From: Mobula hypostoma
Taxonomy: Eukaryota
Reading direction: 5' to 3'
DNA length: 64,000 nucleotides
Assembly (NCBI RefSeq): GCF_963921235.1
Contig: NC_086106.1
Location: forward strand, 18,476,001-18,540,000
A program made the position numbers and the translations under genes. The notes below the pieces were generated by a model that did no database searches, was not told where the DNA came from, and worked only from the letters and a program-made list of their open reading frames with translations. Below, in pieces: positions 31,955-57,580 of the stretch (position 1 is the first letter of the stretch; the number at the start of each line of letters is the position of its first letter).

Positions 31955-32079
31955 TCCTGAAATGAGCAGTTGCAGTGCAGTAGCCTCGGATTGCCGAGTG
32001 AGTGAGATGGAGACTCCATTTCCAAACATCGCAGCCACACGGGGATCTCTTGAGTGAATGTGGGGTGTGTGTCTGCTGG

Positions 32080-32091
32080 TCACTGCTGAAC
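32080..32091 (-). CDS. IgW: Ig heavy-chain TM2 mini-exon (V-Q-Q-stop)
   Basis: Acceptor ctctcctgtctatatttcag|GTT CAG CAG TGA is phase 0 and matches the phase-0 TM1 donor ATCAAG|GTAACC. It gives the tail K-V-Q-Q, analogous to the K|VK split of Ig TM exons. It lies in the first unique sequence after the TE block and is followed by AATAAA. Confidence 0.72.
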   Translation of the reverse strand, partial: VQQ

Positions 32092-33431
32092 CTGAAATAT
32101 AGACAGGAGAGTATGATATTGTGTGACAAGGTGCAGCACGGACCTTAACCTGTGAGGACAGGTGAACTAAACAACATCTCATTCCAGGAGGTGGAATCCC
32201 ATAAAGAGATGTTTGTCATTAGTCTCCGAGGTCATACCAAAACAAAAACCTGAATACCAGTTCAGACCTTTAGGGTGATCCACAGTTGGGCTAATGTTTT
32301 AGTTCCTGAGTAAAACCATAAGATAAGACATAGGAGCAGAATTAGGCCATTTGGCCCATTGAGTCTGCTCCAGCATTTCATCATGACTGATCCAATTTCC
32401 CTCTCAGCCCCAATTACTTGCCTTCTCCCAGTATCCCTTCATGTCCTGACTAATCAAGAATCTATCAACCTCTTCCTTACATATATCCAGTGAGTTGGGT
32501 ACCACAGCTGCCTGTGGCAATAAATTATACAGATTTTCCACTCTCTGGCTAAAGAAATTCCCCTTCACCTCTGTTCTAAGTGGATGGCCCTCTATTCTGA
32601 GGCTGTGTCCTCTTGTCTTAGACTCTCCCACCGCAGAAAACTCCTCAACACATCAACTCTATTGAGATTTCAACATTCGATAGGTTTCAATGAGGTCCCC
32701 CTCATCCTTGTAAATTCCAGTGAATACAGACTCTGAGCCATCAAACACTTGTCATATGATAAGCCTTTCAATCCCTGAATCATTTTTGTGAACCTGCTCT
32801 GAATCCTCTTCAATTTCAGCAAATCCTTTCTTAAAAAAGGTGCTCAAAACTGCTCACCATACTACAAGTGAGACCTCACTAGTGCCTTAGAAATACTCAA
32901 CATTACATCCTTGCTTTTATATTTTATTTCTTTTGAAATGAATTCAAACATTGCATTTGCCTTCCTTGCCACAGACTCAACCTGCAAATTAGCCTTAGTG
33001 GAATCCTACACAAGGACTCCCAAAGCCCTGCACTTCAGATTTTTGAATTTTCTCTCCATTTATAAAATAGCCTATGCCTTCATTTCTTCTCCCGAAGTAT
33101 TTGACCATTCACCTCCCAACACTTTATCATATCTGCCACTTCTTCGCCCATTCTCTTAATCTGTCTAAGTATTTCTGTAGCCTCACTTCTTTCTCAACTC
33201 TACCAGCCCTTCCACCTGTCTTTGGCCATAAAAGCCATCAATTTTGTAATCCAAATCATTGACATTTTACATGAAAAGATGCAGTCCCAACACAGACCCT
33301 TGTGGAACACCACCAGTCACCGGCAGCTAACCAGAAAAGGCTCCCTTTATTCCTACTCTTTCCCTCCTGTCAATCAGAGAATGTTCTATCCATGCTAGTA
33401 TTTTTCCTGTAGTACTATGGGTTCTTTGGTA

Positions 33432-33567
33432 ACACACACACAATGCTGGAGGAGCTCAGCAAGCCTGGCAGCATCTGTGAAAAAGACTAAACATTCGAAG
33501 TTTCAAACTGATGAAGGGACTTGGCCCAAAACATCGTTTGTTTAGTCTTTTCCATAGACGCTGCCTG
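33432..33567 (+). repeat. Short Penelope-derived palindromic element with a degenerate hammerhead-like loop
   Basis: Inverted arms at 33467-33493 and 33539-33565 (GGCAGCATCTGTGAAAAAGACTAAACA vs rc GGCAGCGTCTATGGAAAAGACTAAACA) flank CTGATGAAGGGACTTGGCCCAAAACATC. Confidence 0.7.
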
Positions 33568-36087
33568 CCATCATCCTGCCTTTAGAATATTTCTTCTTTG
33601 GGTTGCATCTATCTTGTGCCTTTCAAATTGCTCCCAGAATCTCCAGCCATTCCTGCTTTGTCATCATCCCTGCTAGTGTCCCCTACCAAATAAATTTTGG
33701 CCAGCTCCTCTCTCATGCCTCTGTCATTCCCTTTACTCCACTGTAATTCTGATCCATTGATTTTAGCTTCTCCTTCTCAAATTAATTGCAGGATGAATTA
33801 AATCATATTTTGATCATAGCTCCTAAGCGTTCCCTTACTTTAAACTCTCCACTCCAGTTCATTGCACAACACCTAATCCAGAATAGCTAATGCCGAGTGG
33901 GCTCATTCATCACCTGCTCTAAAACAACTCATAAGCATTCTACAAATTCTTTCCCTTGGGATGCGGCACCAAAATAATTTACTACAGCATGGGCCATTTG
34001 GCCTGCACTGTTGTGCAGAACCAGCTATAAAGCAAATCGAAAGTACCCAAGCACCAATCCCTACCACCTACACCATGTCCATATCCCCCCTTCTTCCCTA
34101 CATCCACTTGCCTATCCAAACATCTCTAATGTATTTGCCTCTACCATCACATCAGCCGATGCATTCCAGACATCCTCCACTCTCTGAGTATAAAACTAAG
34201 CCCTCACTTCCCCTTGGTCCTATCCCCCTCACCTAAAATTCATGCTCTCTGGTAATACATATTTCAACCCTGGGAAAGAGATACTCTCTCTCCACTCTAT
34301 CTTTGTCTCTCATAATCTTGTAAACCTCGAGTAGATCCCGCACCCCCCAGCCTCCAAAGCTCCAGGGAAAACAACCCAAGTTTATGTGGCCTCTCCTGAT
34401 TGCATGTTCCCTCGAAACCAGGCAGAATCCTGGCAAACCTCCTCTACACCCTCTCCAAGGCCTCAACATCCTTCCAATAGTGGGGGAACCAGAATTGTCC
34501 GCAATACTTCAGTGTGGTCTAACCTGAGTTTTATAAAGTTGTAACATAACCTCCTGACTTTTGAACTCAATGCCTCGATTAATAAAAGCAAGCATTCCTT
34601 AAACCTTGTTAACCAATTTATTGACCTGTGTAGCCACTTTCAAGGAGTATGACCTTGGATCCTATGATCTCTCTGCTTAACAATACTGTAAAAGACCTTC
34701 CCCTTAAAGGTGTACTGTCTCTTTACATTTGCCCTCCTGAGGTGTAACACCTCACATTTATCTGGATTAATCTCCATCTGCCATTTCTGAGTCCACATCT
34801 GCAGCTGATCAATGTTGTGCTGTATTCTTTGCCAGTCTTGCACACTATCCACAACTCCACCAGCCTTGGTATCATTCGCAAATTTACAAATCCACTCATC
34901 CACATTTTCATCCAGATCACTTATATACATTACAAACAGCAGAAGTCCCAGCACAGATACCTACGGGACTCCACTAATTACCGACCGCCAGCTTGAACAA
35001 ATCCCCTAAACCATTAGCCTCTGTCTTCTATTCGCAAGCTAGTTCTGAATCCAAACAGCTGGTTTGCCACGGACCCCATGTATCTTAATCTTCTGGATTA
35101 ACCTCCCATGGGGGACTTTGTCAAATGCCTTACTAAAATTCATGTGGACAGCATCCACTGCCCTACCGTCATCAATCTGTCTTGTCACCTTGTCAAAAAA
35201 CTCAGTCAAGTTGTAAGGCACAACCTGCCACGCATAAAGCAATGCTGGCTCTCCCTAATTAGGCCATGGCTTTCCGAAAGGGGATATCGAGGTACAACAT
35301 TAGCCACTCGCCAGTCCTCTGGGAACTCACCTGTGGCAAGATAGGACACAAAGAGACTGGTCTCTTGCCTCCTTCAATAACCTGGAGTAAATCCCATCTG
35401 GGCTGTAGGACATCCATCTTAATCCTGATCAAGAGGCCCAACACTTCCTCCTCCTTGACTCTAAATGTCCAAATGTATTTATCTACTCAGCACTGATCTC
35501 CATATCCTTTTCCTTGGTAAATACTGAAGCAAAGTACTCATTTGGCACCTCATTCATATTCTCTGCATCCAAGCAAATATTACCGCTCCCCCCATCCTTG
35601 AGTGGTCACACCCTCTCCTGAGTTATCCTCTTATTCTTGATGTATGTATAAAATGCCTTGAGATTCACCTTAATCCTAGTTGTCAAGGACTTTACATGGC
35701 CCCTCCTGGCTTCCGTCATTCCCTTTAGTTCCTTTATATAGAAGATAGAACATAGAATAGTACAGCACATTATAGGCCCTTCGGCCCACAATGTTGTGCC
35801 GACCCTCAAACCCTGCCTCCCATATAACCCCCCCACCTTAAAGTCCTCCATATACCTGTCTAGTAGTCTCTTAAATTTCACTAGTGTATCTGCCTCCACC
35901 ACTGACTCAGGCAGTGCGTTCCACGCACCAAGCACTCTGAGTGAAAAACCTTCCTCTAATATCCACCTTGAACTTCCCACCCCTAACCTTAAAGCCACGT
36001 CCTCTTGTATGGAGCAGTGGTGCCCTGGGGAAGCGGCGCTGGCTGTCCACTCTATCTATTCCTCTTAATATCTTGTACACCTCTGTC

Positions 36088-36715
36088 ATGTCTATGGGAG
36101 AGTATAGGAGCAGGGATGTGATGTTGAGGCTCTATAAGGCGCTGGTGAAACCTCACTTGGAGTACTGTGGGCAATTTTGGTCTCCTTATTTAAGAAAGGA
36201 TGTGCTGACATCCTTTGGAGAGGGTACAGAGAAGATTCACTAGAATGATTCCGGGAATGAGCGGGTTAACATATGAGGAACATTTGTCCGCTCTTGGACT
36301 GTATTCCTTGGAGTTTAGAAGAATGAGGGGAGACCTCATAGAAACATTTCGAATGTTGAAAGCAATGGACAGAGTGGATGTGACAAAGTTGTTTCCCATG
36401 ATGAGGGAGTCTAGTACGAGAGGGCATGACTTAAGGATGTAAGGGCGCCCATTCAGTACAGAGATGCAAAGAAAATTTTTTAGCCAGAGGGTGGTGAATC
36501 TATGGAATTTGTTGCCATGGGCGGTAGTGGAGGCCAAGTCATTGGGTGTATTTAAGGCAGAGATTGATAGGTATCTGAGTAGCCAGGGCATCAAAGGTTA
36601 TGGTGAGAAGGCGGGGAGTGCGACTAAATGGGAGAATGAATCAGCTCATGATAAAATGGCGGAGCAGACTCGATGGGCCAAATGGCCGACTTCTGCTCCT
36701 TTGTCTTATGGTCTT
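36088..36715 (+). mobile_element. CR1 3' fragment nested in the minus-strand CR1
   Basis: [37 protein letters not shown]; tail GTCTTATGGTC; the host sequence resumes after it. Confidence 0.85.
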
Positions 36716-38446
36716 TTGTCTCTTGTCATCCTCCTTCTCTCCAAAGAGTAAAGCCCTAGCTCCCTTAATCTCTAATCCATACTCTCTAAACCAGGCAGCA
36801 TCCTGGTGAAACTCCTCTGTACCCTTTCCAATGCTTCCACATCCTTCCTATAGTGAGGCAACCAGAACTGGACACAGTACTCCAAGTGTGGCCTAACCAG
36901 AGTTTTACAGAGCTGCATCATTACCTCGCGACTCTTAAACTCTATCCCTCGACTTATGAAAGCTAACACCCCATAAGCTTTCTTAACTACCCTATCTACC
37001 TGTGAGGCAAATTTCAGGGTTCTGTGGACATGTACCCCCAGATCTCTCTGCTCCTCCACACTACCAAGTATCCTGCTATTTACTATGTACTCTGACTTGG
37101 AGTTTGTCCTTCCAAAGTGTACTACCTCACAATTCTCCGGGTTGAACTCCATCTGCCACTTCTCAGCCCACTTCTGCATCCTATCAATGTCTCTCTGCAA
37201 TCTTCGACAATCCTCTATACTATCAACAACACCACCAACCATGATCTCTGTCATCTGCAAACTTGCCAACCCACCCTCCTACCCTGACATCCAGGTCATT
37301 AATAAAAATCACAAATAGTAGAGGTCCCAGAACCAATCCTTGTAGGACACCAAAAGTCACAACCCTCTAATCCAAATGTTCTCCCCCCACCACGACCCTC
37401 TGCCTTCTACAGGCAAGCCAGTTCTGAATCCACCTGGCCAAACTTCCCTCGATCCCATGCCTTATGACTTTCTGAATAAGCCTACCGTGTGAAACCTTGT
37501 CAAATGCCTTACTAAAATCCATGTAGATCACAACTGCACTACCCTCATCTATATGCCTGGTCACCTCATCAAAGAACTCCATCAGGCTTGTTGGACACGA
37601 TCTGCCCTTCACAAAGCCATGCTGACTGTCCCTGATCAGACTATGATTCTCTAAATGCCCATAGATCCTATCTCTAAGAATCTTTTCCAACAGCTTTCCC
37701 ACCACAGACGTAAGGCTCACTGGACTATGATTACCTGGACTATCCCTACTACCTTTTTTGAACAAGGGGACAACATTCGCCTCCCTCCAATCCTCCGGTA
37801 CCATTCCCGTGGACAATGAGGACATAAAGATCCTTGCCAGAGGCTGAACAATCTCTTCCCTCGCCTCGTGGAGCAGCCTGGGGAATATTCCATCAGGCCC
37901 CGGGGACTTATCCATCCTAATGTATTTTAATAACTCCAACACCTCCTCTCCCTTAATATCAACATGCTCCAGAACATCAACCTCACTCATATTGTCCTCA
38001 CCGTCTTCAAGTTCCCTCTCATTGGTGAATACTGAAGAGAAGTATTCATTGAGCACCTTGCTCACTTCCACAGCCTCCAGGCACATCTTCCCACCTTTAT
38101 CTCTAATCGGTCCTATCTTCACTTCTGTCATCCTTTTGTTCTTCACATAATTGAAAAATACCTTGGGGTTTTCCTTTACCCTACTCGCCAAGGCCTTCTC
38201 ATACCCCCTTCTTGCTCCTCAGCCCCTTCTTTTGCTCCTTGCTACCCTATATTCCTCAATAGACCCATCTGATCTTTGCTTCCAAAACCTCATGTATGCT
38301 GCCTTCTTCCACCTGACTAGATTTTCCACCTCACTTGTCAACCATGGTTCCTTCACCCTACCATTCTTTATCTTCAAGAGATCCCTAAACATCGACCACA
38401 TGTCCACAGTACATTTCCCTGCAAAAACATCATCCCAATTCACACC

Positions 38447-41400
38447 AAACAACAGGAATTTTGCAGATGCTGGAAATTCAAGCAACATACATCAAAGTTG
38501 CTGGTGAACACAGCAGGCCAAGCAGCATCTCTAGGAACAGGTGCAGTCGACGTTTCAGGCCGAGACCCTTCGTCAGGACGAACTGAAGGAAGAGTGAGTA
38601 AGGGATTTGAAAGCTGGAGGGGGAGGGGGAGATGCAAAATGATAGGAGAAGACAGGAGGGGGAGGGATAGAGCCGAGAGCTGGACAGGTGATAGGCAAAA
38701 GGGGATACGAGAGGATCATGGGACAGGAGGTCCGGGAAGAAAGACAAGGGGGGGGGTGACCCAGAGGATGGGCAAGAGGTATATTCAGAGGGACAGAGGG
38801 AGAAAAAGGAGAGTGAGAGAAAGAATGTGTGCATAAAAATGAGTAACAGATGGGGTACGAGGGGGAGGTGGGGCCTTAGCGGAAGTTAGAGAAGTCGATG
38901 TTCATGCCATCAGGTTGGAGGCTACCCAGACGGAATATAAGGTGTTGTTCCTCCAACCTGAGTGTGGCTTCATCTTTACAGTAGATGAGGCCGTGGATAG
39001 ACATGTCAGAATGGGTACAGTAGAGGAGGCCGTGGATAGACATGTCAGAATGGGATGTTGGGCAAAGATCGCAAGCTCCTACATCTACGGACTCCAGAGC
39101 CTGCCGGCCCCGACGCTAGCAGGCATGAACTTTCAATTGCGGCCCCTGCCATTGATCTCGGCGGCTCCAACACCTCAGGGCATATTCAAAACCCGGACTC
39201 CAGCAACGACCATGGACACATTCGAAGTGATTGCGCAACCACCAACTGCAACTCCAGCCTTGAACTCCAGGCAGGGTCTTTATGTGCTGCTGTTGTGACT
39301 CCCGTCTCCCCTTCCCCCACCACCACTCCGCAGCCCCGTCTTCCTCAGATCCCACCGTCAACTCCTGGGCCCTCAGAGGCTCCATCTTCCTCTCACCCCA
39401 ACCCTCCCCTCTCCACTGACACCCCCAGCCTCCCCCCTCCCCCCTCTGATCCCAGCTCTCAAGATTCCAGCCTTGAACTCCAGGCCGGGTCTTTATGTGC
39501 TGCTGTTGTGACTCCCGTCTCCCCTTCCCCCACCACCACTCCGCAACCCCGTCTTCCTCAGTTCCCACCGTCAGCTCCTAGGCCCTCAGAGGCTCCATCT
39601 TCCTCTCACCCCAACCCTCCCCTCTCCACTGACACCCCCAGACTCCCCCCTCCCCCCTCTGATCCCAGCTCTCATCCGTGCCGGGTCTTTACCATCCCCT
39701 CCGACCTTCAACTGTCTGAGGCAGAACGCTCTGTTCTCAGTAAGGGCCTCACGTTTGTCCCCCTTCGCCCACACCTCAGCGAGTTCCGTGTTCGCCATGA
39801 TGCGGAACTTTTCTTCCGCCGTCTCCGTTTCCGAGCCTACTTCTTCGGCAAGGACTCTTCCACCCCCACCGATGACCCCTTCTCCCGTCTTCAACCCTCC
39901 TCTTCTTCATGGACACCCCGCTCTGGTCTTCTGCCTGCTCTGGATTTCTTTATTGCTAACTGCCGACGGGACATCAACCGTCTCGACTTCACTGCACCTT
40001 GTCCCCATTCCAACCTCACTCCTTCGGAACGCTCTGCTCTCCACTCCCTCCGCACTAATCCTAACCTTATTATTAAACCCGCTGATAAGGGGGGTGCTGT
40101 TGTAGTCTGGCGTACTGACCTCTACCTTGCCGAGGCGCAGCAACAACTCGCGGATACCTCCTCTTATTTACCCCTCGATCGTGACCCCACTAAGGAGCAC
40201 CAGGCCATTGTCTCCCACACTATCACCGACTTTATCCGCTCAGGGGATCTCCCATCCACTGCTACCAACCTTATAGTTCCCACACCCCGCACTTCCCGTT
40301 TCTACCTCCTACCCAAGATCCACAAACCTGCCTGCCCTGGCCGACCTATTGTCTCAGCTTGCTCCTGCCCCACCAAACTCGTTTCTGCATACCTCGACAC
40401 TGTTTTATCACACCTTGTTCAATCCCTTCCGACCTATGTTCGTGACACCTCTCACGCTCTTAAACTTTTCGATGATTTTAAGTTCCCTGGCCCCCACCGC
40501 TTTATTTTCACCATGGATGTCCAGTCCTTATATACTTCCATCCCCCATCAGGAAGGTCTCAAAAGCTCTACGCTTCTTTTTGGATTCCAGACCTAATCAG
40601 TTCCCCTCTACCACCACTCTGCTCCGTCTAGCGGAATTAGTCCTTACTCTTAATAATTTCTCCTTTTGCTCCTCCCATTTCCTCCAAACTAAAGGTGTAG
40701 CTATGGGCACCTGTATGGGTCCTAGCTATGCCTGCCTTTTTGTTGGGTTTGTGGAACAATCTATGTTCCGTGCCTATTCTGGTATCTGTCCCCCACTTTT
40801 CCTTCGCTACATCGATGACTGCATTGGCGCTGCTTCCTGCACGCATGCAGAACTCGTTGACTTTATTAACTTTGCCTCCAACTTTCACCCTGCCCTCAAG
40901 TTTACCTGGTCCATTTCCGACACCTCCCTCCCCTTTCTAGATCTTTCTGTCTCTGTCTCTGGAGACAGCTTATCCACTGATGTCTACTATAAGCCTACTG
41001 ACTCTCACAGCTATCTGGACTATTCCTCTTCTCACCCTGTCTCTTGCAAAAACGCCATCCCCTTCTCGCAATTCCTCCGTCTCCGCCGCATCTGCTCTCA
41101 GTATGAGGCTTTTCATTCTAGGACGAGGGAGATGTCTTCATTTTTTAAAGAAAGGGGCTTCCCTTCCTCCACTATCAACTCTGCTCTTAAACGCATCTCC
41201 CCCATTTCACGTACATCTGCTCTCACTCCATCCTCCCACCACCCCACTAGGAATAGGGTTCCCCTGGTCCTCACCTACCACCCCACCAGCCTCCGGGTCC
41301 AACATATTATTCTCCGTAACTTCCGCCACCTCCAACGGGATCCCACCACTAAGCACATCTTTCCTTCCCCCCTCTCTCTGCATTCCGCAGGGATTGCTCC

Positions 41401-42265
41401 CTACACAACTCCCTTGTCCATTCGTACCCCCCATCCCTCCCCACTGATCTCCCTCCTGGCACTTATCCGTGTAAGCGGAACAAGTGCTACACATGCCCTT
41501 ACATTTCCTCCCTTACCACCATTCAGGGCCCCAACCAGTCCTTCCAGGTGAGGCATCTCTTCACCTGTGAGTCGACTGGGGTGATATACTGCGTCCGGTG
41601 CTCCCGATGTGGCCTTTTATATATTGGCGAGACCCGACGCAGACTGGGAGACCGCTTTGCTGAACATCTACGCTCTGTCCGCCAGAGAAAGCAGGATCTC
41701 CCAGTGGCCACACATTTTAATTCCACATCCCATTCCCATTCTGACATGTCTATTCACGGCCTCCTCTACTGTAAAGATGAAGCCACACTCAGGTTGGAGG
41801 AACAACACCTTATATTCCGTCTGGGTAGCCTCCAACCTGATGGCATGAACATCGACTTCTCTAACTTCCGCTAAGGCCCCACCTCCCCCTCGTACCCCAT
41901 CTGTTACTCATTTTTATGCACACATTCTTTCTCTCACTCTCCTTTTTCTCCCTCTGTCCCTCTGAATATACCTCTTGCCCATCCTCTGGGTCACCCCCCC
42001 CTCCTTGTCTTTCTTCCCGGACCTCCTGTCCCATGATCCTCTCGTATCCCCTTTTGCCTATCACCTGTCCAGCTCTCGGCTCTATCCCTCCCCCTCCTGT
42101 CTTCTCCTATCATTTTGCATTTCCCCCCCCCTCCAGCTTTCAAATCCCTTACTCACTCTTCCTTCAGTTAGTCCTGACGAAGGGTCTCGGCCTGAAACAT
42201 CGACTGCACCTGTTCCTAGAGATGCTGCTTGGCCTGCTGCGTTCACCAGCAACTTTGATGTATGT
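38447..42265 (+). mobile_element. Nearly intact Penelope-like element: inverted 5' terminal repeat, RT and GIY-YIG endonuclease, 3' terminal repeat
   Basis: 14-bp TSD TCCCAATTCACACC (38433-38446, 42266-42279). 38447-39058 is an inverted copy of the 3' end. The ORF (39055-41874) is broken by two frameshifts (about 40561 and about 41370). Motifs: KPADKGGAVV, PGRPIVS, MDVQSLYTSIPH, GVAMGTCMGPSYA, RYIDD, CKRNKCYTC, VIYC..C..C.LLYIGET.R.L..RF.EH. Confidence 0.95.
38546..38579 (-). ncRNA. Minimal type I hammerhead ribozyme core in the inverted Penelope repeat
   Basis: Minus strand reads gtc-CTGACGA-agggtctcggcct-GAAACGTC-gac: conserved CUGANGA and GAAA, stem II, palindromic ACGU stem III, GUC cleavage triplet and a gtc/gac stem I. 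The copies at 42170-42205 (GAAACATC) and 401-440 (GAAATGTC) are mutated. Confidence 0.65.
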
Positions 42266-47150: not shown

Positions 47151-47574
47151 AACCACCATAAAAACCTTAGAACATTATCGACTATTGAAAGGCCCAGATA
47201 GGGTTGATGTGGAGAGGATGTTTGCGAGAGTGTCAGGATGCCAGTATACACAGGCCGCTCCCACCATAGGCTGTTTGCGGAGGGAAGACAGAAGGGAAAC
47301 ACCAGAGAAAAAGTCAGGTAGACACAGTGAACCAGACCTCCCACCTACCTGTTTCTATCCCTGCCGCCATTGGTTAAAAGGTCTGCTGGTCCTCCCACCC
47401 GTCTTTCATCTGGTTAGAGAAACATACAGACCATCTACCTCTATTGGTTGGAGGTCTGCATGTTCCCACCCTCCCTTTTTATCTCCAATGGTTTGCGCAT
47501 AGATCTGACATACGGCTTGCCCTACCAGTGGTCACATTTTTTAAAGTCGTTGTGGGGGTTGAATCGCATGAAAA

Positions 47575-48445
47575 TTTTTCAGAAAGGTTCAATTCCTCGG
47601 CACAGACTCATCCTGCAAATTAACCATGAGAGAATCCTGCACAAGGATTCACAAAACCCTTTGCATCTCAGAGTTTTGTATTTTCTGTCCATTAGGAAAG
47701 AGTCAACCATTTCATTTCTTCTACCAAAGAGCATGACCATACAATTCCCAACATTGTATTCCATCTGCCTCTTCTTTGCCCACTCTCCTAATCTAATCTA
47801 TTTAACTGTTTCTGTATTGTCCCTACTTCCTCAAAACTACTTGCCCCTCAACCTATTGTCTGCAAACTTTCCAACAAATCCATCAAGTCCAACATCCAAA
47901 TCACTGACATATAATGTAAAAAGATAAAATCTTTCTGAATGTTGTGGTGTACACCATCTGGTCCATGTGACTTATTTACCTTCAGACCTTTCAATTTCTC
48001 AAGAATCTTCTCTGTAATAGTGGTAGATTCACACACCTCATGACGCTGACACCTGGAACTTCTAACAGACTGCTAGTGTCATCCTCACTGATGCAAGATA
48101 TTTATTCAGTTTGTCCACCATTTTCTTGTCCCCCATTATTACCTCTCCAGTATTTTTTCCAGTGGTCCGATACCCACTCTCGCATCTCTTTTACACTTTA
48201 TGTATCTGAAGCAAGATTTGGTGTTCTCTTTAATACTATTGGGTAGCTAACTTTGAAATTCCGTCTTACTCTTCTTACTGATGTTTGTAGATGCCTTCTG
48301 TTGGTTTTAAATGCTGCCCAATCCTCTAACTTCCCACCAATGCGAGCTCAATGATATGCCCTGTCTTTGGCTGTTATGTTGCCTTTGACTTCCATTGTTG
48401 TGTCATCTTGCCATGGTTGTGTCATCTTGCCTTTTGAACACTTCT
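47575..48445 (-). mobile_element. Fragmented CR1 LINE
   Basis: MEYNVGNCMVM.FGRRN; LKGLKVNKS.GPDG.H. Confidence 0.8.
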
Positions 48446-50030
48446 TCCTCCTCAAATCCCCGTCTGAATCCTCAGGCAATGGCAGCGAGGCATTACAAAG
48501 GGTTATTTCCCTCTTGGAAATAGACTTCGAGGTCCTTCAGACCTAGTGGCTGGATTCCATAAGCTTGGCTGCAAGTTCCCCAGACTGTTCAGATATTTCC
48601 TTGGTCCTCTCCTGAACGAGAGGTCCCAACTAGATGGTGTTGGGACTTGCAGTGTATTGACTGGAAATGGCTTGTTCATCCTTGAGGGCAGGACTTGGTC
48701 TCTCGAAGGTCTCAGGTTACCTCACACTGAAGGCAGCCCTCTTATTGGTTGTTGGTCACAGGAGAGTCTGAGTCTCAGAACACCATGGCGCAAACAAACC
48801 CTCTTATGATGACTGGAGCAAGCAATGATTCTCCCCTCCCTCCAGTCCACAGCTGGGGATATTCGGCCCACCAGTGACAGACTTTCCCACAGTAAAAGCA
48901 GCGACCTTGACTCTGACGCCAGGACCTTTCATCGGCGGAGACTCCAGTACAACCGACCTGCATGGGTTCAACTGGATCTTGAGTCAGCGACGGGCTGGTT
49001 ATGGTCCGAGGTTCGGGGGTGAAACTGCGATGCGTAGGGACTGGGATTGGACCAGCTCACTTTGACTTCCTGAAGTGGTCCCACTTTTGGTCTGCCAGAC
49101 GATTATTGAGATGGATGGACTGATCACTCAAAGCCTCTGCGATCTCAGTTGGCTTTCCCGAGGAGAGGCATCCTTCAGTTCATCCGTGGCAGTAGAACAT
49201 GGCCATGGCCTCCCCATTCCAACCACTCTTCTGGGCCAAGGTCCAAAATTCGACTGCATTGTCGGCCGCAGACCATACCCACTGTTGAGCTCGCTGGCAC
49301 CGATGAGGTGATTAAACACCTTCCATATGGCAGCCATGAATTCCTCTGAATCCGAAGAGGTCTCAGACCTACATTCCAAATGCGTAGTGGCCCAGGCCAG
49401 GGCTCTTCCAGTCCGGAGAGAGATAATGAAGGCCACCTTTCCTCGCTCTGAAGGGAATTGGGACAGCTGTAGTTCAAACACGAATGAGCATTGGGTGAAG
49501 AGCCATGGCAAGAACCCGAGTCACTGTCGAATCTCTCTGGGGTTGAATGATGTGCTGGCTCCATACAAGCATGAAATGGCTTTCCCAAACGACCTTGGCT
49601 TCCTCCTTGCGTAAGTTGTTGAATGGCTACCTGGAGTTCGTGAATCTCCAGGCCTTGTCTGGAAATCCTCGTCACCACAGTGGACGAAAGATTTTGATAT
49701 CCCACTGGGTCCATGTTTGCTCAATTGTAATGTGACAAGAGTCCTTGATGAGAATGGTTTGGACCCAATTGCCGGGGTAAACGAAGCAAGGTTCTAAACA
49801 CAGTATCAAACTAGATCTGAGCACAAAACAAATGCTGGATGATATCACCAGTTGGCTTATGATTGAGCACCAAACCTCTGTTCAGCTGTTCCTTAAATAC
49901 TCAATTCTTGGTGCCCAAACATGATTATCAATTAGCAGGACCATCCTGATTCCCTAAAGGGGCCATGCCAGCTATCCGTACTCCCGGAAGCTGGTGCAGT
50001 TGGGAGTGTCTTGTAATAACGACTTCTGGC
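48446..50030 (-). mobile_element. 5' part (LTR, gag, PR remnant) of a chromovirus-type Gypsy of the same family as Gypsy-4
   Basis: LTR at about 49732-50020; gag FVFELQ..QFPSERGKVAFIISL.TGRALAWAT; zinc knuckle GRCFYCGK..HW; 48446-48830 aligns to 25690-26210. Confidence 0.85.
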
Positions 50031-50650
50031 TAGTCACGCTTGCCGTTGAGAATACCATGGACACAATCTTTGATATCCCTGCTCCTGGCAGCAGGGAAGC
50101 AACATACCATCTGGGTGTCTCTATCGAGCCCACAGAACCTCGTCCCTGTTCTTCTGATGAAGGAATCTCCTATCATAACTGCATTCCTCTTCACCTCTCT
50201 CCTCTTCTGAGCCACATCACCAGACTCAGTGCCAGAGACCCGGTCATTCTGGCTCCCCCCGGTAGGTGGATTCCTCTCCATTGTATCTAAAGTTAAATGC
50301 TTGTTATTGAGGGGAACAGCTACAGGTGTTCTCTGCACTGGTTCTGCATTTCCCCTCAATCTCCTGACAGTCACCCAGTTACCTGTCTCCTGCAACCTTG
50401 GGGTAACTATCTCTCTGTAGCTCCTGTCTATCACCTCATCATTCTCCCATATGAGTCGAAGGTCATCGAGCTGCAGCTCCAGTTCCTTAATACATTCTCT
50501 CAGTTGCTGCAACTCGGCGCACCTGGTACAGATGTGTTCACCTGGGAGACTGGAGTCTCCCAGACTTCCCACATCCCACACAGAGTGCAAAACACTGTCC
50601 CTGGAGCCATTCTCACTAAACTACCATGTCCTAATAGATGAGGAGTGAAC
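50030..50650 (-). mobile_element. CR1 5' region (Cys-rich, coiled-coil, SGNH esterase start)
   Basis: HICTRCAELQQLRECIKELELQLDDLR; AVMIGDS.IR; MVCCFPAAR. May be the 5' end of the outer CR1 of composite A. Confidence 0.85.
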
Positions 50651-50814
50651 AAATAGGAACAGAAAGAGAGAAACCTTGTGGTCTTATGGAAGGTGGAGCA
50701 GGGTTGAAATGGAGGAAATTCATGAGACATAATCTCCCACACACACAGCCTTGTTGACTAATCCTAATCAACCCAAGTTTTTTGAAATAGCTCTTAACCC
50801 TCAGGTCTCCTCCA

Positions 50815-53800
50815 TTAAAACCATAAGATATAGCAGTAGAATTAGGCCATTTTGGCCCATCAAGTCTGCTTCACCATTTCATCATGGCTGATCCACTTTC
50901 CCTCTCAGTCCCAATCTCCTGCCTTCTCCCTGTATCCTGTCATGCCCTGACTAATCAAGAATCTATCAACCTCTGCCTTGAATATACCTAAAGAATTGGC
51001 CTCCACAGCTGCATGTGGCAGCAACTTCCACAGATTCATCACTCTCTGCTGAAAAAAAATTTGTCCTGATATCCTTTCTAAAACAGGCCCCTCAATTTTG
51101 ATGCTGTGCTCTCTGGTCATAGACTCTTCCACCATGAGAAGCATCCTCTCTATATCCACTCTATCAAGGCCTTTCAACATTTGATCAGTTTCAATAATGT
51201 CAGCCTTTATTCTTCTGAATTCCACTGAGCACAGGCCCAAAGCCATCAAACGGTCTTCATATGACATGCTTTCAATTCTGGAATCATTTACATGAATTCC
51301 TTTGAACCCCCTCCAATGTCAGCACATCCTTTCTTAGATAAGGGGGCCAAAATTGCTCACAGTAGTCAAAGTGAGGCCTTACCAGTGCTTTCGAAAGCTT
51401 CAATATTACATCCTTGCATTTATCTTGTAGTCCTCTTGAAATTAATGCTGACATCACATTTGCCTTCCTCACCACTGACTCAACCTGCAAATTAACCTTC
51501 AGGGAATCCCACACAAGGACTCCCAAGTCCATTTGCACCTCAGATTTTTGAATTTTCTCTCTATTTAGAAAATAGTCTATGATTTACTTTTACGAGTTCC
51601 TTTACTTTTAACTCTGGTTCATTGCACAACCCCCAATGCAGAATAGCTAATTGCCTGGTGGGCTCAATCACCAGCTGCTCTGAAAAAACAAGCTCGTAAG
51701 CATTCTACAAATTCCTTCCCTTGGTATCCGGCACCTTAATGATTTAGTACAGCACAGGCTGTTCAGCCCACAATGTTGTGCTAAACCAGCTATAAAGCAA
51801 ATCAAAACCATCCAGACATCAATCCCTCCTACTTACACCATGTGCATAGCCCTCCTACTTCCTTACAACAACTGAGAAAGAGATACTCTCTGTCCACTCA
51901 TATGCCTCTCATAATCTTGTACACCTCTATCTGATGCTCAGAGGAAACAAACCAAGTTTATCCAGCCTCTCATGATAGCACATGCCCTCTAAACCAGGCA
52001 GCGTCCTGGTAAACCTCTTCTGCAACCTCTCCAAAGCCTCAGCATATTTCCTATAGTGGGCCAACCTGAACTCTACGCAATACTCCAGATGTGATCAAAC
52101 CAGGCTTTTATAAAGTTGCAAAATAACGTCCCGACCTTTGAATTCAATGCCGCAACTAATACAAGCAAGCCTTCTGCAAATCTTGTTAAGCCCCTTATTG
52201 AACTGTGTAGCCATTTTCAAGGAGATTGAACTTGGATCACAAGATCTCTCTGCTCAGCAACACTGTTAAGAACCTTGCCCTTAAAGGTGTGCCCTTGTTC
52301 CCTTCATAAACAGAGGTACAATATTAGTTCTGATGACTTATGCATCTTAATTCGGAGCAGGAAGGCTGCCAGTGAACGGCTAAGGATTTCTGGAGCGAAG
52401 GCATTTTGCTACTCGGGGTAGGAGGCAAGACTGCGCAAGCGCATGACATCAACCAGTAGAGTAGGAAAAGTTCAAAAAGAAGTCTGCCATATTCAGTGGG
52501 CAGCATTCAGAGCAGGCAACGGAGTGAGAAGTAGCAGAGTGAGAGGGCTTTAGCTCAATGGGCTTAGGCAGTAGCGAGGCAAGGTGGGTTTACCTGTGCT
52601 CATAGCGGAAAGGAAGTATGTGTGTGAGGCTGGTGTTCTGTGCTCGGTGTCAGATGTGGGAGGTCCTGGAGTCTCCTAGTCTCCTAGACAGCCATATCTG
52701 CACCCAGTGTGTCAAGCTGCAGCTCCTAAGGGACCGCATTAGGGAACTGGAGATGCAGCTCGATGACCTTCGTCTGGTCAGGGAGAGTGAGGAGGTGATA
52801 GAGAGGAGTTACAGGCAGGGGGTCACACTGGGGCCACGGGACACAGACAAGTGGGTAACAGTTAGGAGAGGGAAGAGGAAGAGTCAGGTACTAGAGAGTA
52901 CCCCTGTGGCTGTACCCCTTGACAATAAGTACTCCTGTTTGAGTACTGTTGGGGGGGACAGCTTACCTGGGGGAAGCAACAGTGGCTGTGCCTCTGGCAC
53001 AGAGTCCGGCCCTGTGGCTCAGAAGGGGAGGGAAAGGAAGAGAACGGCAGTCATGATAGGGGACTCTATAGTTAGGGGGTCAGACAGGCGATTCTGTGGA
53101 TGCAGGAAAGAAACTTGGATGGTAGTTTGCTTCCCAGGTGCCAGGATCCAGGATGTTTCAGATCACGTCCAAGGTATCCTGCAGTGGGAGAGAGAACAGC
53201 CAGAGGTCGTGGTACATATTGGTACCAATGACATGGGTAGGAAAAGGGAAGAGGTCCTGAAAAAAAGACTACAGGGAGTTAGGCTGTATTTGATTTGGTA
53301 TTGGGAAATGAACCTGGTCAGGTGTCAGATCTCTCAGTGGGAGAGCATTTTGGAGGTAGTGATCATAATTCTATCTCCTTTACAATAGCATTGGAGGGAA
53401 ATAGGAACAGACAAGTTAGAAAAGCGTTTAATTGGAGTAAGGGGAATTATGAGGCTATCAGGCAGGAAATTGGAAGCTTGAATTGGGAACAGATGTTCTC
53501 AGGGAAAAGTACAGAAGAAATGTGGCAAATGTTCAGGGGATATTTGTGTGGAGTTCTGCATAGGTACATTCCAATGAGACAGGGAAGTTATGGTAGGGTA
53601 CAGGAACCATGGTGCACAAAGGCTGTAATAAATCTAGTCAAGAAGAAAAGAAAAGCTTACAAAAGGTTCAGAGAGCTAGGTAATGTTAGAGATCTAGAAG
53701 ATTACAATGCTAACAGGAAGGAGCTTAAAAAGGAAATTATGAGAGCCAGAAAGGGCCATGAGAAGGTCTTGGCAGGCAGAATTAAGGAAAACCCCAAGGC

Positions 53801-56800
53801 ATTCTACAAGTATGTAAAGAGCAAGAGGCTAAGATGTGAAAGAATAGGACCTATCAAGTGTGACAGTGGGAAAGTGTGTACGGAACCGAAAGAAATAGCA
53901 GAGGTACTTAATGAATGCTTTACTTCAGTATTCACTATGGAAAAGGATCTTGGTAATTGTAGTGATGACTTGCAGCAGACTGAAAAGCCTGAGCATATAG
54001 ATATTAAGAAAGAGGATGTGCTGGAGCTTTTGGAAAGCATCAAGTTGGATAAGTCGCCGGGACCGGATGAGATATACCCCAGGCTACTGTGGGAGGCGAG
54101 GGAGGAGATTGCTGAGCCTCTGGCGATGATCTTTGAATCGTCAATGGTGACGGGAGAGGTTCTGGAGGATTGGAGGGTTGCAAATGTTGTTCCTTTATTC
54201 AAGAAAGGGAGTAGAGATAGCCCAGGAAATTATAGACCAGTGAGTCTTATTTCAGTGGTTGGTAAGGTGATGGAGAAGGTCCTAAGAGGCAGGATTTTTG
54301 AACATTTGGAGAGATATAGTATGATTAGGAATAGTCAGCATGGCTTTGTCAAGGGCAGGTCGTGCCTTACAAGCCTGATTGAATTTTTTGAGGATATGAC
54401 TAAACACATTGATGAAGGAAGAGCAGTAGATGTAGCGTATATGGATTTCAGCAAGGCATTTGATAAGGTACCCCATGCCAGGCTTATTGAGAAAGTAAGG
54501 AGGCATGGAATCCAAGGGGACATTGCTTTGTGGATCCAGAACTGGCTTGCCCACAGAAGGCAAAGAGTGGTTGTAAATGGGTCATATTCTGCATGGAGGT
54601 TGGTGACCAGTGGTATGCCTCAGGGATATGTTCTGGGACTCCTACTCTTCGTGATTTTTATAAATGACCTGGATGAGGAAGTGGAGGGATGGGTTAGTAA
54701 GTTTACTGATGACACAAAGGTTGGTGGTGTTATGGATAGTGTGGAAGGCTGTCAGAGGTTACAGTGGGACATTGATAGGATGCAAAACTGGGCTGAGAAG
54801 TGGCAGATGGAGTTCAACCCAGATAAGTGTGAAGTGGTTCATTTTGGTAGGTCAAATATGATGGCAGAATATAGTAGTAATGGTAAGACTCTTGGCAGGG
54901 TGGAGGATCAGAGGGATCTTGGGGTCCAAGTCCATAGGATGCTCAAAGCAGCTGCCCAGGTTGACTCTGTGGTTAAGAAGGCATACAGTGGTTAAGAAGC
55001 CTTCATTAATCATCAAATTGAATTTAGGAGCTGAGAGGTAATGTTGGACCCTGGTCAGACCCCACTTGGAGTACTGTGCTCAGTTCTGTTCGCCTCACTC
55101 CAGGAAGGATGTGGAAGCCATAGAAAGGGTGCAGAGGAGATTTACAAGGATGTTGCTTGGACTGGGGAGCATGCCTTATGAAAACAGATTGAGTGAACTC
55201 GGCCTTTTCTCCTTGGAGCGACGGAGGATGAGAGATGACCTGATAGAGGTGTATAAGATGATGAGAGGCATTGCCCGTGTGGATAGTCAGAGGCTTTTTC
55301 CCAGGGCTGAAATGGTTGCCACAAGAGGACACAGGTTTAAGGTGCTGGGGAGTAGGTACAGAGGAGATGGTATGTCTTTTTTATGCAGAGAGTTGTGAGT
55401 GCGTGTAATGGGCTACTGTCAACGGTGGTGGACGTGGATACGATAGACTCTTTTAAGAGACTTTTGGATAGGTACATGGAGCTTAGAAAAATAGAGGGCT
55501 ATGGGTAAGCCTAGTAATTTCCAAGTTAGGGACATGTTCAGCACAACTTTGTGGGCCAAAGGGCCTGTATTGTGCTGTAGGTTTTCTAAGTTTCTATGTT
55601 TCTATGTTAATCCCTTTACGGAGGCCCAATACTTCCTCCAACTTTACCTTGAAATGCCCGAATTTATTTGTACATTCAGCACTGATCTCTTGGTCATCCA
55701 CATCTTTTTCCTTTGTAAATACTGAAGCAAAGTACTCATTAAGTACCTCACTCACATTCTCTGCATCCAAGCAGATATTCCCCCCTTTATCATTAAGTGG
55801 TCCCACCCTTTCCCGAGTTATCCTCTTACCCTTGATATATGTATAGAATGCCTTGGGATTCACCTTAATCTAACTTGCCAAGGACTTTTCATAGCCCCTG
55901 CTGGCTTTCCTAATTTCCTTTAGTTCCTTTCTAGCTTCTTTATACCCCTAATGTGCTTTGTTTGATTCAACCTTTACATTCTTGATCTTTTTCTTCTTGA
56001 CTAAACTCATCACCTCTCTGAACATCCAGGGTTCTCTTATCTTTCCATCCCCATCCTTCCTTCTGACAGGAACATACTTTTCCTGTACTCTGTGCAATTG
56101 CTCTTTAAATACCTTCCACATGTCTGATGTGAACTTGCCAGAGAAAAGGTGTTTACAATTAACAATTCTTGGTTCCTGCCGAATGCCCTTGTAAATTGCC
56201 CTATGCCAATTTAAAATTGTTCCACAAGGATAATACCTATCCTTGTCAATAGTTATCCTGAAAGTTAATGAGTTGTCACTCTTCCCTTACTGTTCACCCA
56301 GTGAAAGGTCAGTCACCTGGCCAGGCTCATTCTCCAGTACCAGGAGCAGTATGGCCCCTCCTTTCATTGGACCATACACATATTGATTTGAGAAACCTTC
56401 CTGGATGCACTTAACAAATTCAGCCCGATCAGAATCCCTTAAACTCTCCCATGTAGCATCAGCAAATCTTGAAGCCAGGTTAATGGTTCCCCAGCAGTTC
56501 AGGTGCAATCCATCTCAATCAACCTGCAGACTGAAATTCCCATTGATTATCTTAACATTGCACTTTTGACATGCATCTTCCGTCTCCCATTGTAATTTGT
56601 AGACCACATATTTGTTATACTATTTGCAGGTCTGTTTCTAATTCCCATCAGGGACTTTCACCCTTGCAAATCCTTAGCTCTACCTAGAACAGTTCTATAC
56701 CATCTGATCCTATGTCACCTCTTTCTAATCATTTAATTTAATATTTTACCAACACAGCCACACCACACCTTCGGCCTACCTCCCTGTCCTTTTGATACAA

Positions 56801-57245
56801 TATGTATCCTTGGACATCAAGCTCCCAGTTATACAGTAATCTTCTTTCAGCCACAATTCAGTGATACCCACAATGTCATACATGCCAATCTGTAGCTGTG
56901 TTACAAGTTCATCTAGCATAGTGTATTCCGTATACTATGTGCGTTCAGATATAACACCTTCAGTCCTGTGTTTATCACAATTCAAAATTTTGTCTCCCTT
57001 TTACATTGTAACTCATCCCGTTGACGGCAATTTTACCCGAACATCAGCTTCTTCTTGCTAGCAGTCTCACTACACACTGCTTCTGTTTGTAAACCAACAA
57101 CTTGATCCTCAACCCTTTCACTTCATTTCCCATCCCCCTGCCAAATTTGTTCCAACCCTTCTGAACAGCTCTAGCAAACTGGTCTGCAAACCTATTTGCC
57201 TCCATCGATTCAGGTGTAACCTGTCCCTTTTCTACAGGTCATAAC
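50815..57245 (-). mobile_element. Composite CR1 copy B: outer CR1 (50815-51735, 56513-57245) with the same second CR1 family nested at 51736-56512
   Basis: Same junctions as copy A: ...ggtatccggcacc| then inner tail (51735), and gtgcaatccatc|tcaatcaacctgcagactgaaattccc (about 56512). Confidence 0.75.
52352..55608 (+). mobile_element. CR1 retaining 5' UTR, esterase start, RT and 3' tail, but with most of the APE endonuclease deleted
   Basis: ORF 52618-53388 (C..C, HIC..C, VMIGDS, FPGA, VHIGTND) joins directly at about 53285 to LDLVLGNEPGQV; open 566-aa ORF at 53295-54995; TTTCTATG tail. Confidence 0.92.
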
Positions 57246-57437
57246 TTCTGCTTATCAAGGCCCAGAGTCTTCGAGTAAAGAGGAAAGGTGTAAAGTTCCC
57301 CGGGGTTGTGAAGGGCTTCAGACTGCATTGTCTGTTGATTGTGCTGTCGTTGGGATTGCAGTGTCAGGGAATGCAATGTGAGTTAAGGAAGGTGAAAGTT
57401 TGGGTTTCATGGGAGTCTTTGTTAGTCACTTGGTTAC

Positions 57438-57580
57438 CTTGATAACGGTGACGAAGGTGCTGTAGAGGAAACTGATGATGAACAGAATGGCAAAGGCAGC
57501 AACTGTAAGCACATTGTCATCTCCATCCACGTGTCCCTGTTCTTCCTTCCCCTCCTCTCCTGTCATGTCTGTGCAGATTC
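57438..57580 (-). CDS. IgW: Ig heavy-chain TM1 exon
   Basis: Acceptor ctttctcaattctttcag|GA (phase 1). Encodes (G)ICTDMTGEEGKEEQGHVDGDDNVLTVAAFAILFIISFLYSTFVTVIK: acidic spacer, hydrophobic helix with the antigen-receptor F..S..YST.VT pattern, then donor AAG|GTAACC. Read-through gives VTK* (stop 57426-57428). Confidence 0.92.

What the first reader, a model, noticed from the sequence alone, without database searches (positions are those of the whole stretch)
32080..57580. TM1 and TM2 separated by a 25,346-nt TE-filled intron
TM1 ends in a phase-0 donor (AAG|GTAACC). The only fitting mini-exon with a poly(A) signal that I found is at 32091, giving ...FVTVIK-VQQ*. Only about 200 nt next to TM1 and about 200 nt next to TM2 look unique; the rest is nested TEs. 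The upstream C-region introns are only 83 nt to about 2 kb. This local expansion could slow or reduce production of membrane relative to secreted mRNA, and it will defeat automated annotation.
Basis: partly seen in the sequence, partly recalled or inferred. Interest (0 to 1): 0.7.

Follow-up and report, generated by a model that had tools for sequence, protein, structure and literature searches.

The report
Transposon-bloated intron between IgW membrane exons
The two small exons that anchor a ray IgW antibody in the B-cell membrane are real and are spliced together, but jumping-gene insertions have stretched the intron between them from about 0.5 kb, as in a sawfish, to 25 kb; this is an ordinary kind of genome bloat with no shown effect on function.

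Summary
On the minus strand, TM1 is 57580-57438, with an AG acceptor and a phase-0 AAG|GTAACC donor. TM2 starts at 32091 (GTT CAG CAG TGA = VQQ*), with AATAAA at 31954-31949. The intron is 57437-32092, exactly 25,346 nt, and contains no N.

- **Homologues:** annotated IgW membrane forms of relatives end the same way. Bamboo shark has ...VTVVKVQQ, Mobula AQQ, stingray VQE and sawfish VLK/VLQ.
- **Sawfish locus:** there the same TM1 and TM2 lie only 488 nt apart. The two halves of that intron align to the 193 nt beside TM1 and the 221 nt beside TM2 in the window.
- **Inserted block:** the 24,932 nt in between (32313-57244) are interspersed repeats. They include LINE reverse-transcriptase fragments on both strands and at least one nested insertion.
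- **RNA:** contigs from four public runs stop at the TM1 donor and continue with letters that match window 32060-32089 uniquely and exactly.

Read-through (VTK*), another TM2 and misassembly are therefore all refuted.

The functional reading, slower or reduced membrane mRNA, is untested and mechanistically weak. "Defeats annotation" is only partly true, because related Mobula gene models do include TM2. This is an ordinary TE-expanded intron in a known gene type.

The parts
60157..60459 (-). C1-set constant-domain exon (CH3-type; the first of the pair just before TM1)
   Evidence: Pfam C1-set, E 1.8e-11. It is 94% identical to residues 1366-1466 of Mobula hypostoma IgW P0017. Acceptor cag|AG and donor aaag|gt are read. 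RNA contig pieces end at these borders.
60074..60156 (-). 83-nt intron between the two constant exons
   Evidence: Joint 60157->60073 'skips 83' in contigs of X3 and X9. GT..AG is read.
59750..60073 (-). C1-set constant-domain exon (CH4-type, ...VRQDVKNIQ), the exon spliced to TM1
   Evidence: Pfam C1-set, E 1.2e-15. It is 86% identical to P0017 residues 1458-1572. Contigs of X1, X3 and X4 join 59750 to TM1.
57581..59749 (-). 2,169-nt intron between the CH4-type exon and TM1
   Evidence: Joint 59750->57576 with 4 letters between them, in three runs. The region is partly colinear with the sawfish locus.
57438..57580 (-). TM1 exon: acidic membrane-proximal spacer plus transmembrane helix (...AAFAILFIISFLYSTFVTVIK)
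   Evidence: Translation. phmmer hits to ray and sawfish IgW membrane forms are 80-91% identical, E 1e-16 to 1e-19. In X9, a contig end just past the acceptor continues into a spliced CH4-type exon end.
32092..57437 (-). TM1-TM2 intron, 25,346 nt (GT...AG)
   Evidence: Sequence read. No RNA contig covers 57267-57383 in any of the four runs, and loose ends at 57436 continue with the letters of TM2.
57245..57437 (-). Ancestral 5' part of the intron (193 nt), homologous to the sawfish TM1-TM2 intron
   Evidence: L001 13236-13641 aligns to window 57640-57245 at 83%. Alignment A1.
32313..57244 (.). 24,932-nt block of interspersed repeats inserted into the ancestral intron. It holds LINE reverse-transcriptase fragments at 37367-38191 (-), 42528-43082 (+) and 53295-54995 (+). 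A nested insertion lies at 42550-43980. A young 3.8-kb element with 532-nt inverted ends lies at 38484-42266.
   Evidence: The block is absent from the sawfish intron. 70.5% of it is repeated elsewhere in the window. RVT_1 hits, E 2e-14 to 3e-32. Repeat families D7, D9, D11-D13, D16 and inverted pairs I2, I6, I7.
32092..32312 (-). Ancestral 3' part of the intron (221 nt) with a conserved pyrimidine tract and acceptor
   Evidence: L001 13719-15886 aligns to window 32312-30179 at 76%. Alignment A1.
31911..32091 (-). TM2 terminal exon: GTT CAG CAG TGA (VQQ*, 32091-32080) plus a 3'UTR with AATAAA at 31954-31949. The 3' end is approximate.
   Evidence: Sequence. The orthologous sawfish TM2 (GTT CTG AAG TGA) has a conserved acceptor and UTR. 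The X4 contig continues 179 letters past the GT shared by donor and TM2. Its first 30 letters match 32060-32089 uniquely. Runs X3, X4, X9 and X10 hold 73-100% of the sampled words of 31930-32130.

Best explanation
These are the two membrane exons of one devil-ray IgW (IgD-orthologue) heavy-chain gene on the minus strand. TM1 (57580-57438) encodes the acidic spacer and the transmembrane helix. TM2 (32091 onward) adds the three cytoplasmic residues VQQ, the stop, the 3'UTR and the poly(A) signal. The ancestral intron was about 0.5 kb, as it still is in the smalltooth sawfish. In the ray lineage about 24.9 kb of transposable elements, LINEs and others with some nested, accumulated in its middle. 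The splice sites and about 200 nt of original intron on each side were left intact. The exons are still joined by ordinary GT-AG splicing. I read the expansion as neutral intron bloat typical of a TE-rich elasmobranch genome, not as a regulatory device. Exon identity, orthology, insertion origin and the spliced junction are shown. Neutrality is inferred.
For: - **Homology of TM1:** it is 80-91% identical to annotated IgW membrane forms of Mobula birostris, M. hypostoma, Hemitrygon akajei and Pristis pectinata.
- **Homology of the TM2 product:** all of these carry exactly three residues after the TM1-final K: AQQ, VQE, VLK or VLQ. Bamboo shark IgW ends VTVVKVQQ, identical to the window's tripeptide.
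- **Sawfish locus L001:** TM1 ends at 13438 and TM2 starts at 13927, a 488-nt intron. The donor is the same AAG|GTAACC, the acceptor context is nearly identical, and the 3'UTR is conserved.
- **Colinearity:** L001 is colinear with the window on both sides of the block. L001 8122-13641 matches 60960-57245, and L001 13719-19054 matches 32312-29302.
- **TE nature of the block:** 70.5% is repeated within the window, it has RVT_1 ORFs on both strands, and it contains a precise nested insertion. Copy 55987-56398 is contiguous, while copy 42417-42549 / 43981-44262 is interrupted.
- **RNA contigs:** four runs from two coded organisms have zero depth over 57267-57383. Their loose ends at 57436 read, on the minus strand, GT+TCAGCAGTGACCAGCAGACACACACCCCAC. 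This matches window 32060-32089 exactly and uniquely.
- **One long contig:** a 594-nt contig holds the CH4-type exon, TM1 and 179 further letters.
- **Shared runs:** the same runs hold the words of both exon stretches, in shares that fit exon-only coverage.
- **No competing exons:** no other Ig exon lies anywhere in 1-57,400, and the window has no N.
Against: - **Which cluster is expressed:** the contigs that carry the CH4-type exon joined to TM1 differ from the window at the first four TM1 letters (AAAC, giving E-T, against the window's GAAT, giving G-I). They also differ at about 3% of the CH exon letters. They therefore come from a paralogous cluster or an allele.
- **Window-type start seen once:** a window-type TM1 start spliced to a CH4-type exon was seen only as one contig end, in X9.
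- **Contig limits:** contigs cannot assign the junction to this exact cluster or measure its use.
- **One outgroup:** only the sawfish locus could be read as DNA. I could not determine whether the expansion is specific to this cluster or when it arose.
- **Neutrality:** it is inferred, not measured.
Confidence: 0.87

Rival explanations
1. The 25-kb TE-filled intron acts as a brake. It delays completion of membrane mRNA or loses transcripts to premature polyadenylation inside the TEs. This cluster would then yield less membrane IgW relative to secreted IgW.
For: The intron adds 25 kb of transcription before the only membrane poly(A) site. On the gene's sense strand it holds 11 AATAAA and 6 ATTAAA hexamers and one sense-oriented LINE RT fragment at 37367-38191. 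From established knowledge, not tested here: experiments on mouse mu genes showed that intron length can shift the secreted/membrane ratio.
Against: Those classic experiments concern the CH4-M1 intron, where the splice competes with the secretory poly(A) site. The TM1-TM2 intron lies downstream of that decision. Spliced TM1-TM2 contigs nearly identical to this cluster are present in all four runs laid. No data on ratios could be obtained, because contig depth is not a measure of expression.
Confidence: 0.08
2. The cluster is a decaying or silent gene. The intact-looking TM exons are relics, the intron bloat reflects relaxed constraint, and all expressed TM1-TM2 contigs come from paralogous clusters.
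For: The well-covered contigs that include the CH pair differ from the window by about 3% and at the TM1 start. Exact matches to the window outside exons are only low-depth unspliced pieces: X1 57577-57825 and 59592-59779, depth 3-7.
Against: Both TM exons, their splice sites and the poly(A) signal are intact. In X9, a contig end just upstream of TM1 continues into a spliced CH4-type exon end, across the window-type first letters of TM1. X4 holds all sampled 31-letter words of the TM2 stretch. TE-rich long introns are also common in functional genes of such genomes (general knowledge).
Confidence: 0.2
3. TM1 is not spliced to 32091. Either it is read through (…VTVIKVTK*), or it uses another TM2 inside the block, or the 32091 exon belongs to another cluster joined by misassembly.
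For: The read-through ORF ends after three codons, VTK*. A second V-initial mini-ORF with a distant hexamer exists at 54668.
Against: - No contig covers 57267-57383 in any run, and every loose end at the donor reads into the 32091 exon.
- Spliced gene models of relatives end in tripeptides of the same type (VQQ, AQQ, VQE, VLQ).
- There is no poly(A) hexamer in the 240 nt after TM1.
- Both breakpoints map to adjacent points of one sawfish intron, L001 13641 and 13719, and colinearity continues for kilobases on both sides.
- There is no N and no other Ig exon in between.
Confidence: 0.03

Closest known systems
IgW (IgD-orthologue) membrane exons TM1/TM2 of elasmobranchs, for example the NCBI models XP_072126131 (Mobula birostris), XP_062916197 (M. 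hypostoma), XP_051882955 (Pristis pectinata, 'igW transmembrane form Tm2T7/Tm7T7/Tm3T3-like') and the Chiloscyllium punctatum IgW models
   Same: The TM1 sequence is the same (80-91% identity). The splice phases are the same: phase 1 into TM1 and phase 0 out of it. TM2 is a three-residue mini-exon (VQQ/AQQ/VQE/VLK/VLQ) followed by the stop. The acceptor and 3'UTR are conserved. TM1 is spliced from a CH4-type exon.
   Different: The intron is 25,346 nt here against 488 nt in the sawfish locus that could be read. A second sawfish TM unit spans only 2.8 kb in all. The first TM1 residues are G-I here against E-T or E-I in the Mobula models.
Mammalian IgM/IgD M1-M2 membrane exon pairs
   Same: The logic is the same. 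M1 encodes the spacer and TM helix, and M2 encodes a two- or three-residue cytoplasmic end (KVK type) plus the 3'UTR and membrane poly(A) site (established knowledge).
   Different: Mammalian M1-M2 introns are about 0.1 to a few kb (from memory, not tested here). The cytoplasmic end here is K-VQQ.
TE-driven intron expansion in large elasmobranch genomes
   Same: LINE-rich, partly nested insertions lengthen an intron while the splice sites and nearby intron sequence are kept.
   Different: There is nothing mechanistically different. It is notable only because Ig membrane-exon introns are usually short and the other introns seen in this gene are 83 nt and 2.2 kb.

Membership tests
Elasmobranch IgW heavy-chain membrane exon pair (TM1+TM2) | TM1 encodes an acidic extracellular spacer and a conserved transmembrane helix (…AAFAILFIISFLYSTFVT..K) | tested here: met
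   Translation. phmmer against 1.84 billion representatives found only IgW membrane forms of rays and sawfish, at 80-91% identity, plus one unrelated low-identity hit.
Elasmobranch IgW heavy-chain membrane exon pair (TM1+TM2) | TM1 is spliced, in phase 1, from an upstream C1-set constant exon of IgW type | tested here: met
   C1-set exons lie at 60459-60157 and 60073-59750. RNA contigs join 59750 to TM1. An X9 contig end joins a CH4-type exon end to the window-type TM1 start.
Elasmobranch IgW heavy-chain membrane exon pair (TM1+TM2) | A phase-0 donor after the TM1-final lysine, joined to a mini-exon of three codons plus stop | tested here: met
   AAG|GT and cag|GTTCAGCAGTGA. Loose ends at the donor in four runs read into 32089-32060. 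Homologues end VQQ, AQQ, VQE, VLK or VLQ.
Elasmobranch IgW heavy-chain membrane exon pair (TM1+TM2) | TM2 carries the 3'UTR and poly(A) signal and is orthologous to TM2 of other species | tested here: met
   AATAAA at 31954-31949. The acceptor, coding part and UTR align with sawfish TM2. Downstream colinearity extends for about 3 kb.
Elasmobranch IgW heavy-chain membrane exon pair (TM1+TM2) | The product is displayed on B cells as an antigen receptor with CD79 | not testable with these tools
   This needs protein and cell work.
LINE (non-LTR) retrotransposon fragments, as filling of the intron | Reverse-transcriptase domain, with repeated dispersed copies | tested here: met
   RVT_1 hits at E 2e-14, 9.7e-14 and 2.9e-32. 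Copies in both orientations are 65-84% alike within the window and in the sawfish locus.

The most novel reading that the evidence does not exclude
The TE-swollen TM1-TM2 intron is a natural experiment. If clusters of one ray genome differ 50-fold in this intron's length, the long-intron cluster may make measurably less membrane IgW through late terminal-exon definition or premature polyadenylation in sense-oriented TEs. Intron bloat would then tune, or be the first step in silencing, individual Ig clusters.
Probability: 0.08. Interest if true: 0.45.

Novelty: new member of a known kind. Interest (0 to 1): 0.22.

Why it matters
The main value is practical. This gives the correct 3' end of one IgW gene in a devil-ray genome. 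It also shows that the membrane terminal exon of an Ig cluster can lie 25 kb beyond TM1. Annotators of elasmobranch Ig clusters should therefore search far downstream and use the conserved TM2 acceptor and UTR as a probe.

In evolutionary terms it is a clean, datable example of an intron growing about 50-fold by TE insertion while about 200 nt next to each splice site is preserved. It does not change what is known about IgW biology unless an effect on membrane/secreted output is shown.

Tried and rejected
- **Read-through end VTK*:** rejected. No contig covers the intron next to TM1, and all loose ends read into TM2.
- **Other TM2 candidates (54668 VIYKNHEE*, 7829 VEGKKAFRK*):** rejected. They have no resemblance to homologues and no RNA support.
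- **Another Ig cluster or exon between TM1 and TM2, or downstream:** none found by tblastn with four IgW proteins.
- **Rfam families in 31000-58000:** none at gathering score.
- **Pfam on 14 further ORFs of the block:** this included the 518-aa and 424-aa ORFs of the inverted-repeat element. Nothing significant was found.
- **The search for homologous proteins with the TM end of P0001 (105-332 aa range):** it found only the query itself. This says nothing about other lengths.
- **DNA of Mobula birostris, M. hypostoma and Hemitrygon akajei loci:** The bamboo shark isoform is not on record. Intron lengths in those species are therefore unknown. Only gene spans are known: 34.6, 57.3, 41.7 and 15.7 kb.
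- **Literature searches:** they gave no published TM1-TM2 intron lengths or TM2 sequences for IgW.
- **Earlier notes of the scan:** they hold no IgW TM1-TM2 distance for other clusters of this genome.
- **Direct joint across 25 kb in read laying:** not attempted. The stretch limit is 6,000 letters, so I used the loose-end letters instead.
Full report
**What is there**

The gene lies on the minus strand. TM1 occupies 57580-57438 (143 nt). It follows ...attctttcag and ends ...GTT ATC AAG|GTAACC. Read from its third base it gives ICTDMTGEEGKEEQGHVDGDDNVLTVAAFAILFIISFLYSTFVTVIK. That is an acidic spacer plus an Ig-type transmembrane helix, entered in phase 1 and left in phase 0.

At 32091 the sequence ...actctcctgtctatatttcag|GTT CAG CAG TGA gives VQQ-stop. 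AATAAA lies at 31954-31949.

I scanned everything downstream of TM1 for a pyrimidine tract + AG, a short V-initial ORF and a poly(A) hexamer. Only three sites came up, among them 32091.

**Is the mini-exon the real TM2?**

An exhaustive phmmer search with TM1 found three related representatives. All are annotated IgW membrane forms, and all have exactly three residues after the TM1-final lysine:

| Species | Protein | C-terminal end |
|---|---|---|
| Mobula birostris | XP_072126131 | ...VTVVKAQQ |
| Hemitrygon akajei | XP_072884950 | ...VNIVKVQE |
| Pristis pectinata | 'igW transmembrane form' | ...VTIVKVLK |

The 90% cluster of the Mobula protein also holds a M. hypostoma model with AQQ. A second search added another M. 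birostris gene (AQQ), a sawfish gene (VLQ) and five bamboo-shark IgW isoforms ending ...VTVVKVQQ. The bamboo-shark tripeptide is identical to the one predicted here. VQQ is therefore the canonical elasmobranch IgW TM2 product. The read-through alternative, VTK*, matches none of them.

**Orthology and the origin of the long intron**

One relative's DNA could be read, the sawfish locus L001.

- **Sawfish exons:** TM1 ends at 13438 with the same AAG|GTAACC. TM2 (GTT CTG AAG TGA) starts at 13927 behind the same ...ctcctgtctatatttcag. The intron is 488 nt.
- **Split homology:** L001 13236-13641 aligns to window 57640-57245 (83%), and L001 13719-14600 aligns to window 32312-31426 (78%). The three-way alignment shows this base by base, including the conserved 3'UTR up to the poly(A) hexamer.
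- **Ancestral parts of the ray intron:** its first 193 nt and last 221 nt are the two halves of the short intron. The 24,932 nt between them (32313-57244) have no sawfish counterpart.
- **Colinearity beyond the exons:** L001 8122-13641 matches 60960-57245, and L001 13719-19054 matches 32312-29302.
- **No competing Ig exons:** the only Ig exons in the whole window are the two C1-set exons at 60459-60157 and 60073-59750, plus TM1.

This excludes a second cluster between TM1 and TM2. It also makes a misjoin very unlikely, because the two breakpoints are neighbouring points of one ancestral intron.

A second sawfish TM gene model spans only 2.8 kb in all.

**What fills the intron**

- 70.5% of the block matches other places in the same 64-kb window, and 45% matches places outside the block.
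- Three ORFs hit Pfam RVT_1: 37367-38191 on the gene's strand, and 42528-43082 and 53295-54995 on the other strand.
- The same LINE family occurs in the sawfish locus at 84% identity.
- Nesting is shown at least once. One repeat copy is contiguous at 55987-56398. Its sister copy, 42417-42549 / 43981-44262, is interrupted by 1,431 nt that carry an RT fragment.
- A young 3.8-kb element with 532-nt inverted ends, 97-99% alike, lies at 38484-42266. Its ORFs match no Pfam family.
- No Rfam family is present in the block.

**RNA**

Runs that hold words of the TM1 stretch also hold words of the TM2 stretch. The shares fit exon-only coverage: about 0.3-0.45 of a 401-nt stretch with a 143-nt exon, and 0.73-1.0 of a 201-nt stretch with about 157 exonic nt.

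I laid the contigs of four runs on 57150-60650. X1, X3 and X4 come from coded organism A, and X9 from organism B.

- **Coverage:** exons are covered, but 57267-57383, the intron beside TM1, has depth zero in all four runs.
- **Joints:** the 83-nt intron is spliced out (60157->60073), and 59750 is joined to TM1.
- **Loose ends at the donor:** every run has a loose end at 57436. Read on the minus strand, it continues from the GT shared by donor and TM2 into TCAGCAGTGACCAGCAGACACACACCCCAC. X1 has one difference, and X3 and X9 show shorter pieces.
- **Unique match:** these 30 letters match the window once, exactly, at 32060-32089, directly abutting 32090-32091.
- **One long contig:** a 594-nt X4 contig contains the CH4-type exon, TM1 and 179 further letters. 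That places its end near 31911, about 40 nt past the hexamer.

**Caveat on which cluster is expressed**

The contigs that join the CH4-type exon to TM1 carry AAAC (E-T) where the window has GAAT (G-I). They also differ at about 3% of the constant-exon letters, so they come from a paralogue or an allele.

A window-type TM1 start was seen in X9. There a contig end just upstream of TM1 (57582) continues into the end of a CH4-type exon (...IKKQVKNVQ) that is not in the window. The same exon end also precedes the exon at 60459. TM1 is thus reached both with and without the last constant pair.

Exact matches to the window outside exons are low-depth unspliced pieces. Contigs cannot give levels. The splice pattern is shown, but its use by this very cluster is likely and not proven.

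**Context from earlier notes (leads, not evidence)**

Other follow-ups on this genome describe a 'membrane-only' CH3'-CH4' pair lying between the secretory exon and TM1 in devil-ray IgW genes (s1-142013, s1-142288, s1-142291). The two exons at 60459-59750 fit that layout. The RNA joints here agree that they are spliced to TM1.

I could not read that sequence.

Another note calls the V-CH1 part of the upstream cluster recently disabled (s1-142012). If that is the same gene, the intron bloat may sit in a decaying cluster. I did not test this.

**How it works**

TM1 and TM2 are joined by ordinary GT-AG splicing across 25.3 kb. The donor (AAG|GTAACC), the pyrimidine tract and acceptor, and about 200 nt of flanking intron are conserved with the sawfish. 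That is what one expects if only insertions sparing the splicing signals were tolerated.

From established work on mouse mu genes, the secreted/membrane choice is a competition between the secretory poly(A) site and the CH-to-M1 splice. That competition lies upstream of this intron.

The extra 25 kb would add minutes of transcription. It also offers 17 sense-strand poly(A) hexamers, which could cost some transcripts.

'Will defeat automated annotation' is only half right. NCBI models of related Mobula genes do reach TM2. No database protein with this cluster's own end was found.

**Verdict**

This is a new member of a known kind: IgW membrane exons with a TE-expanded intron. It is useful for annotation, gives a tidy example of about 50-fold intron growth, and is of low surprise.

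Noticed in passing
window 38484-42266: A young 3.8-kb element inside the intron has 532-nt inverted ends that are 97-99% alike (38484-39015 and 41735-42266). It has an internal 209-nt tandem duplication (39253-39674) and is GC-rich. Its two long + strand ORFs (518 and 424 aa) hit no Pfam family. The class of the element is unknown.
   Followed up: partly
window 57577-57580 and 59750-60459: The well-covered RNA contigs differ from the window at the first TM1 letters (AAAC, giving E-T, against GAAT, giving G-I). They also differ at about 3% of the CH3'/CH4' letters. A very similar paralogous IgW cluster, or a divergent allele, therefore supplies most of the membrane transcripts in these runs.
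   Followed up: partly
window 57582 and 60461 (loose ends of X9 contigs): The same upstream exon end (...ATCAAGAAGCAAGTGAAGAACGTCCAAG = ...IKKQVKNVQ, a CH4-type exon not in the window) is joined both to the exon at 60459 and directly to TM1. Membrane isoforms therefore exist with and without the last constant pair.
   Followed up: partly
window 59372-59592: Contigs of X1 and X3 skip 208-219 nt of the intron between the CH4-type exon and TM1, with 4-15 other letters in their place. This is an indel difference between the window and the transcribed copy or allele.
   Followed up: no
window 13196-14553 (+) and 22890-23594 (-): Downstream of the gene there are fragments of LTR retrotransposons of Ty3/gypsy type. 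Pfam hits are RT_RNaseH, Integrase_H2C2 and rve on the + strand, and SH3_Tf2-1 on the - strand.
   Followed up: no
L001 16239-17609 vs window 54230-55597: A LINE copy just downstream of the sawfish TM2 is 84% identical to a LINE copy inside the ray intron. That is as similar as the orthologous unique DNA of the two species. The family is either long-lived and slowly evolving, or was active in both lineages.
   Followed up: no
L001 (Pristis pectinata) 2572-3300 and 8596-9309; gene model P0021: The sawfish locus has two tandem copies of the CH3'/CH4'-like pair upstream of a single TM1/TM2. One NCBI model (P0021, 1734 aa) spans about 598 kb across several IgW clusters, so it is very likely a chimeric gene model.
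   Followed up: no
window 57209-57248: Short contigs (32-71 nt) of X1 and X4 match only these roughly 35 nt and diverge on both sides. The sequence is probably a fragment shared with a repeat transcribed elsewhere. It lies at the edge of the TE block.
   Followed up: no
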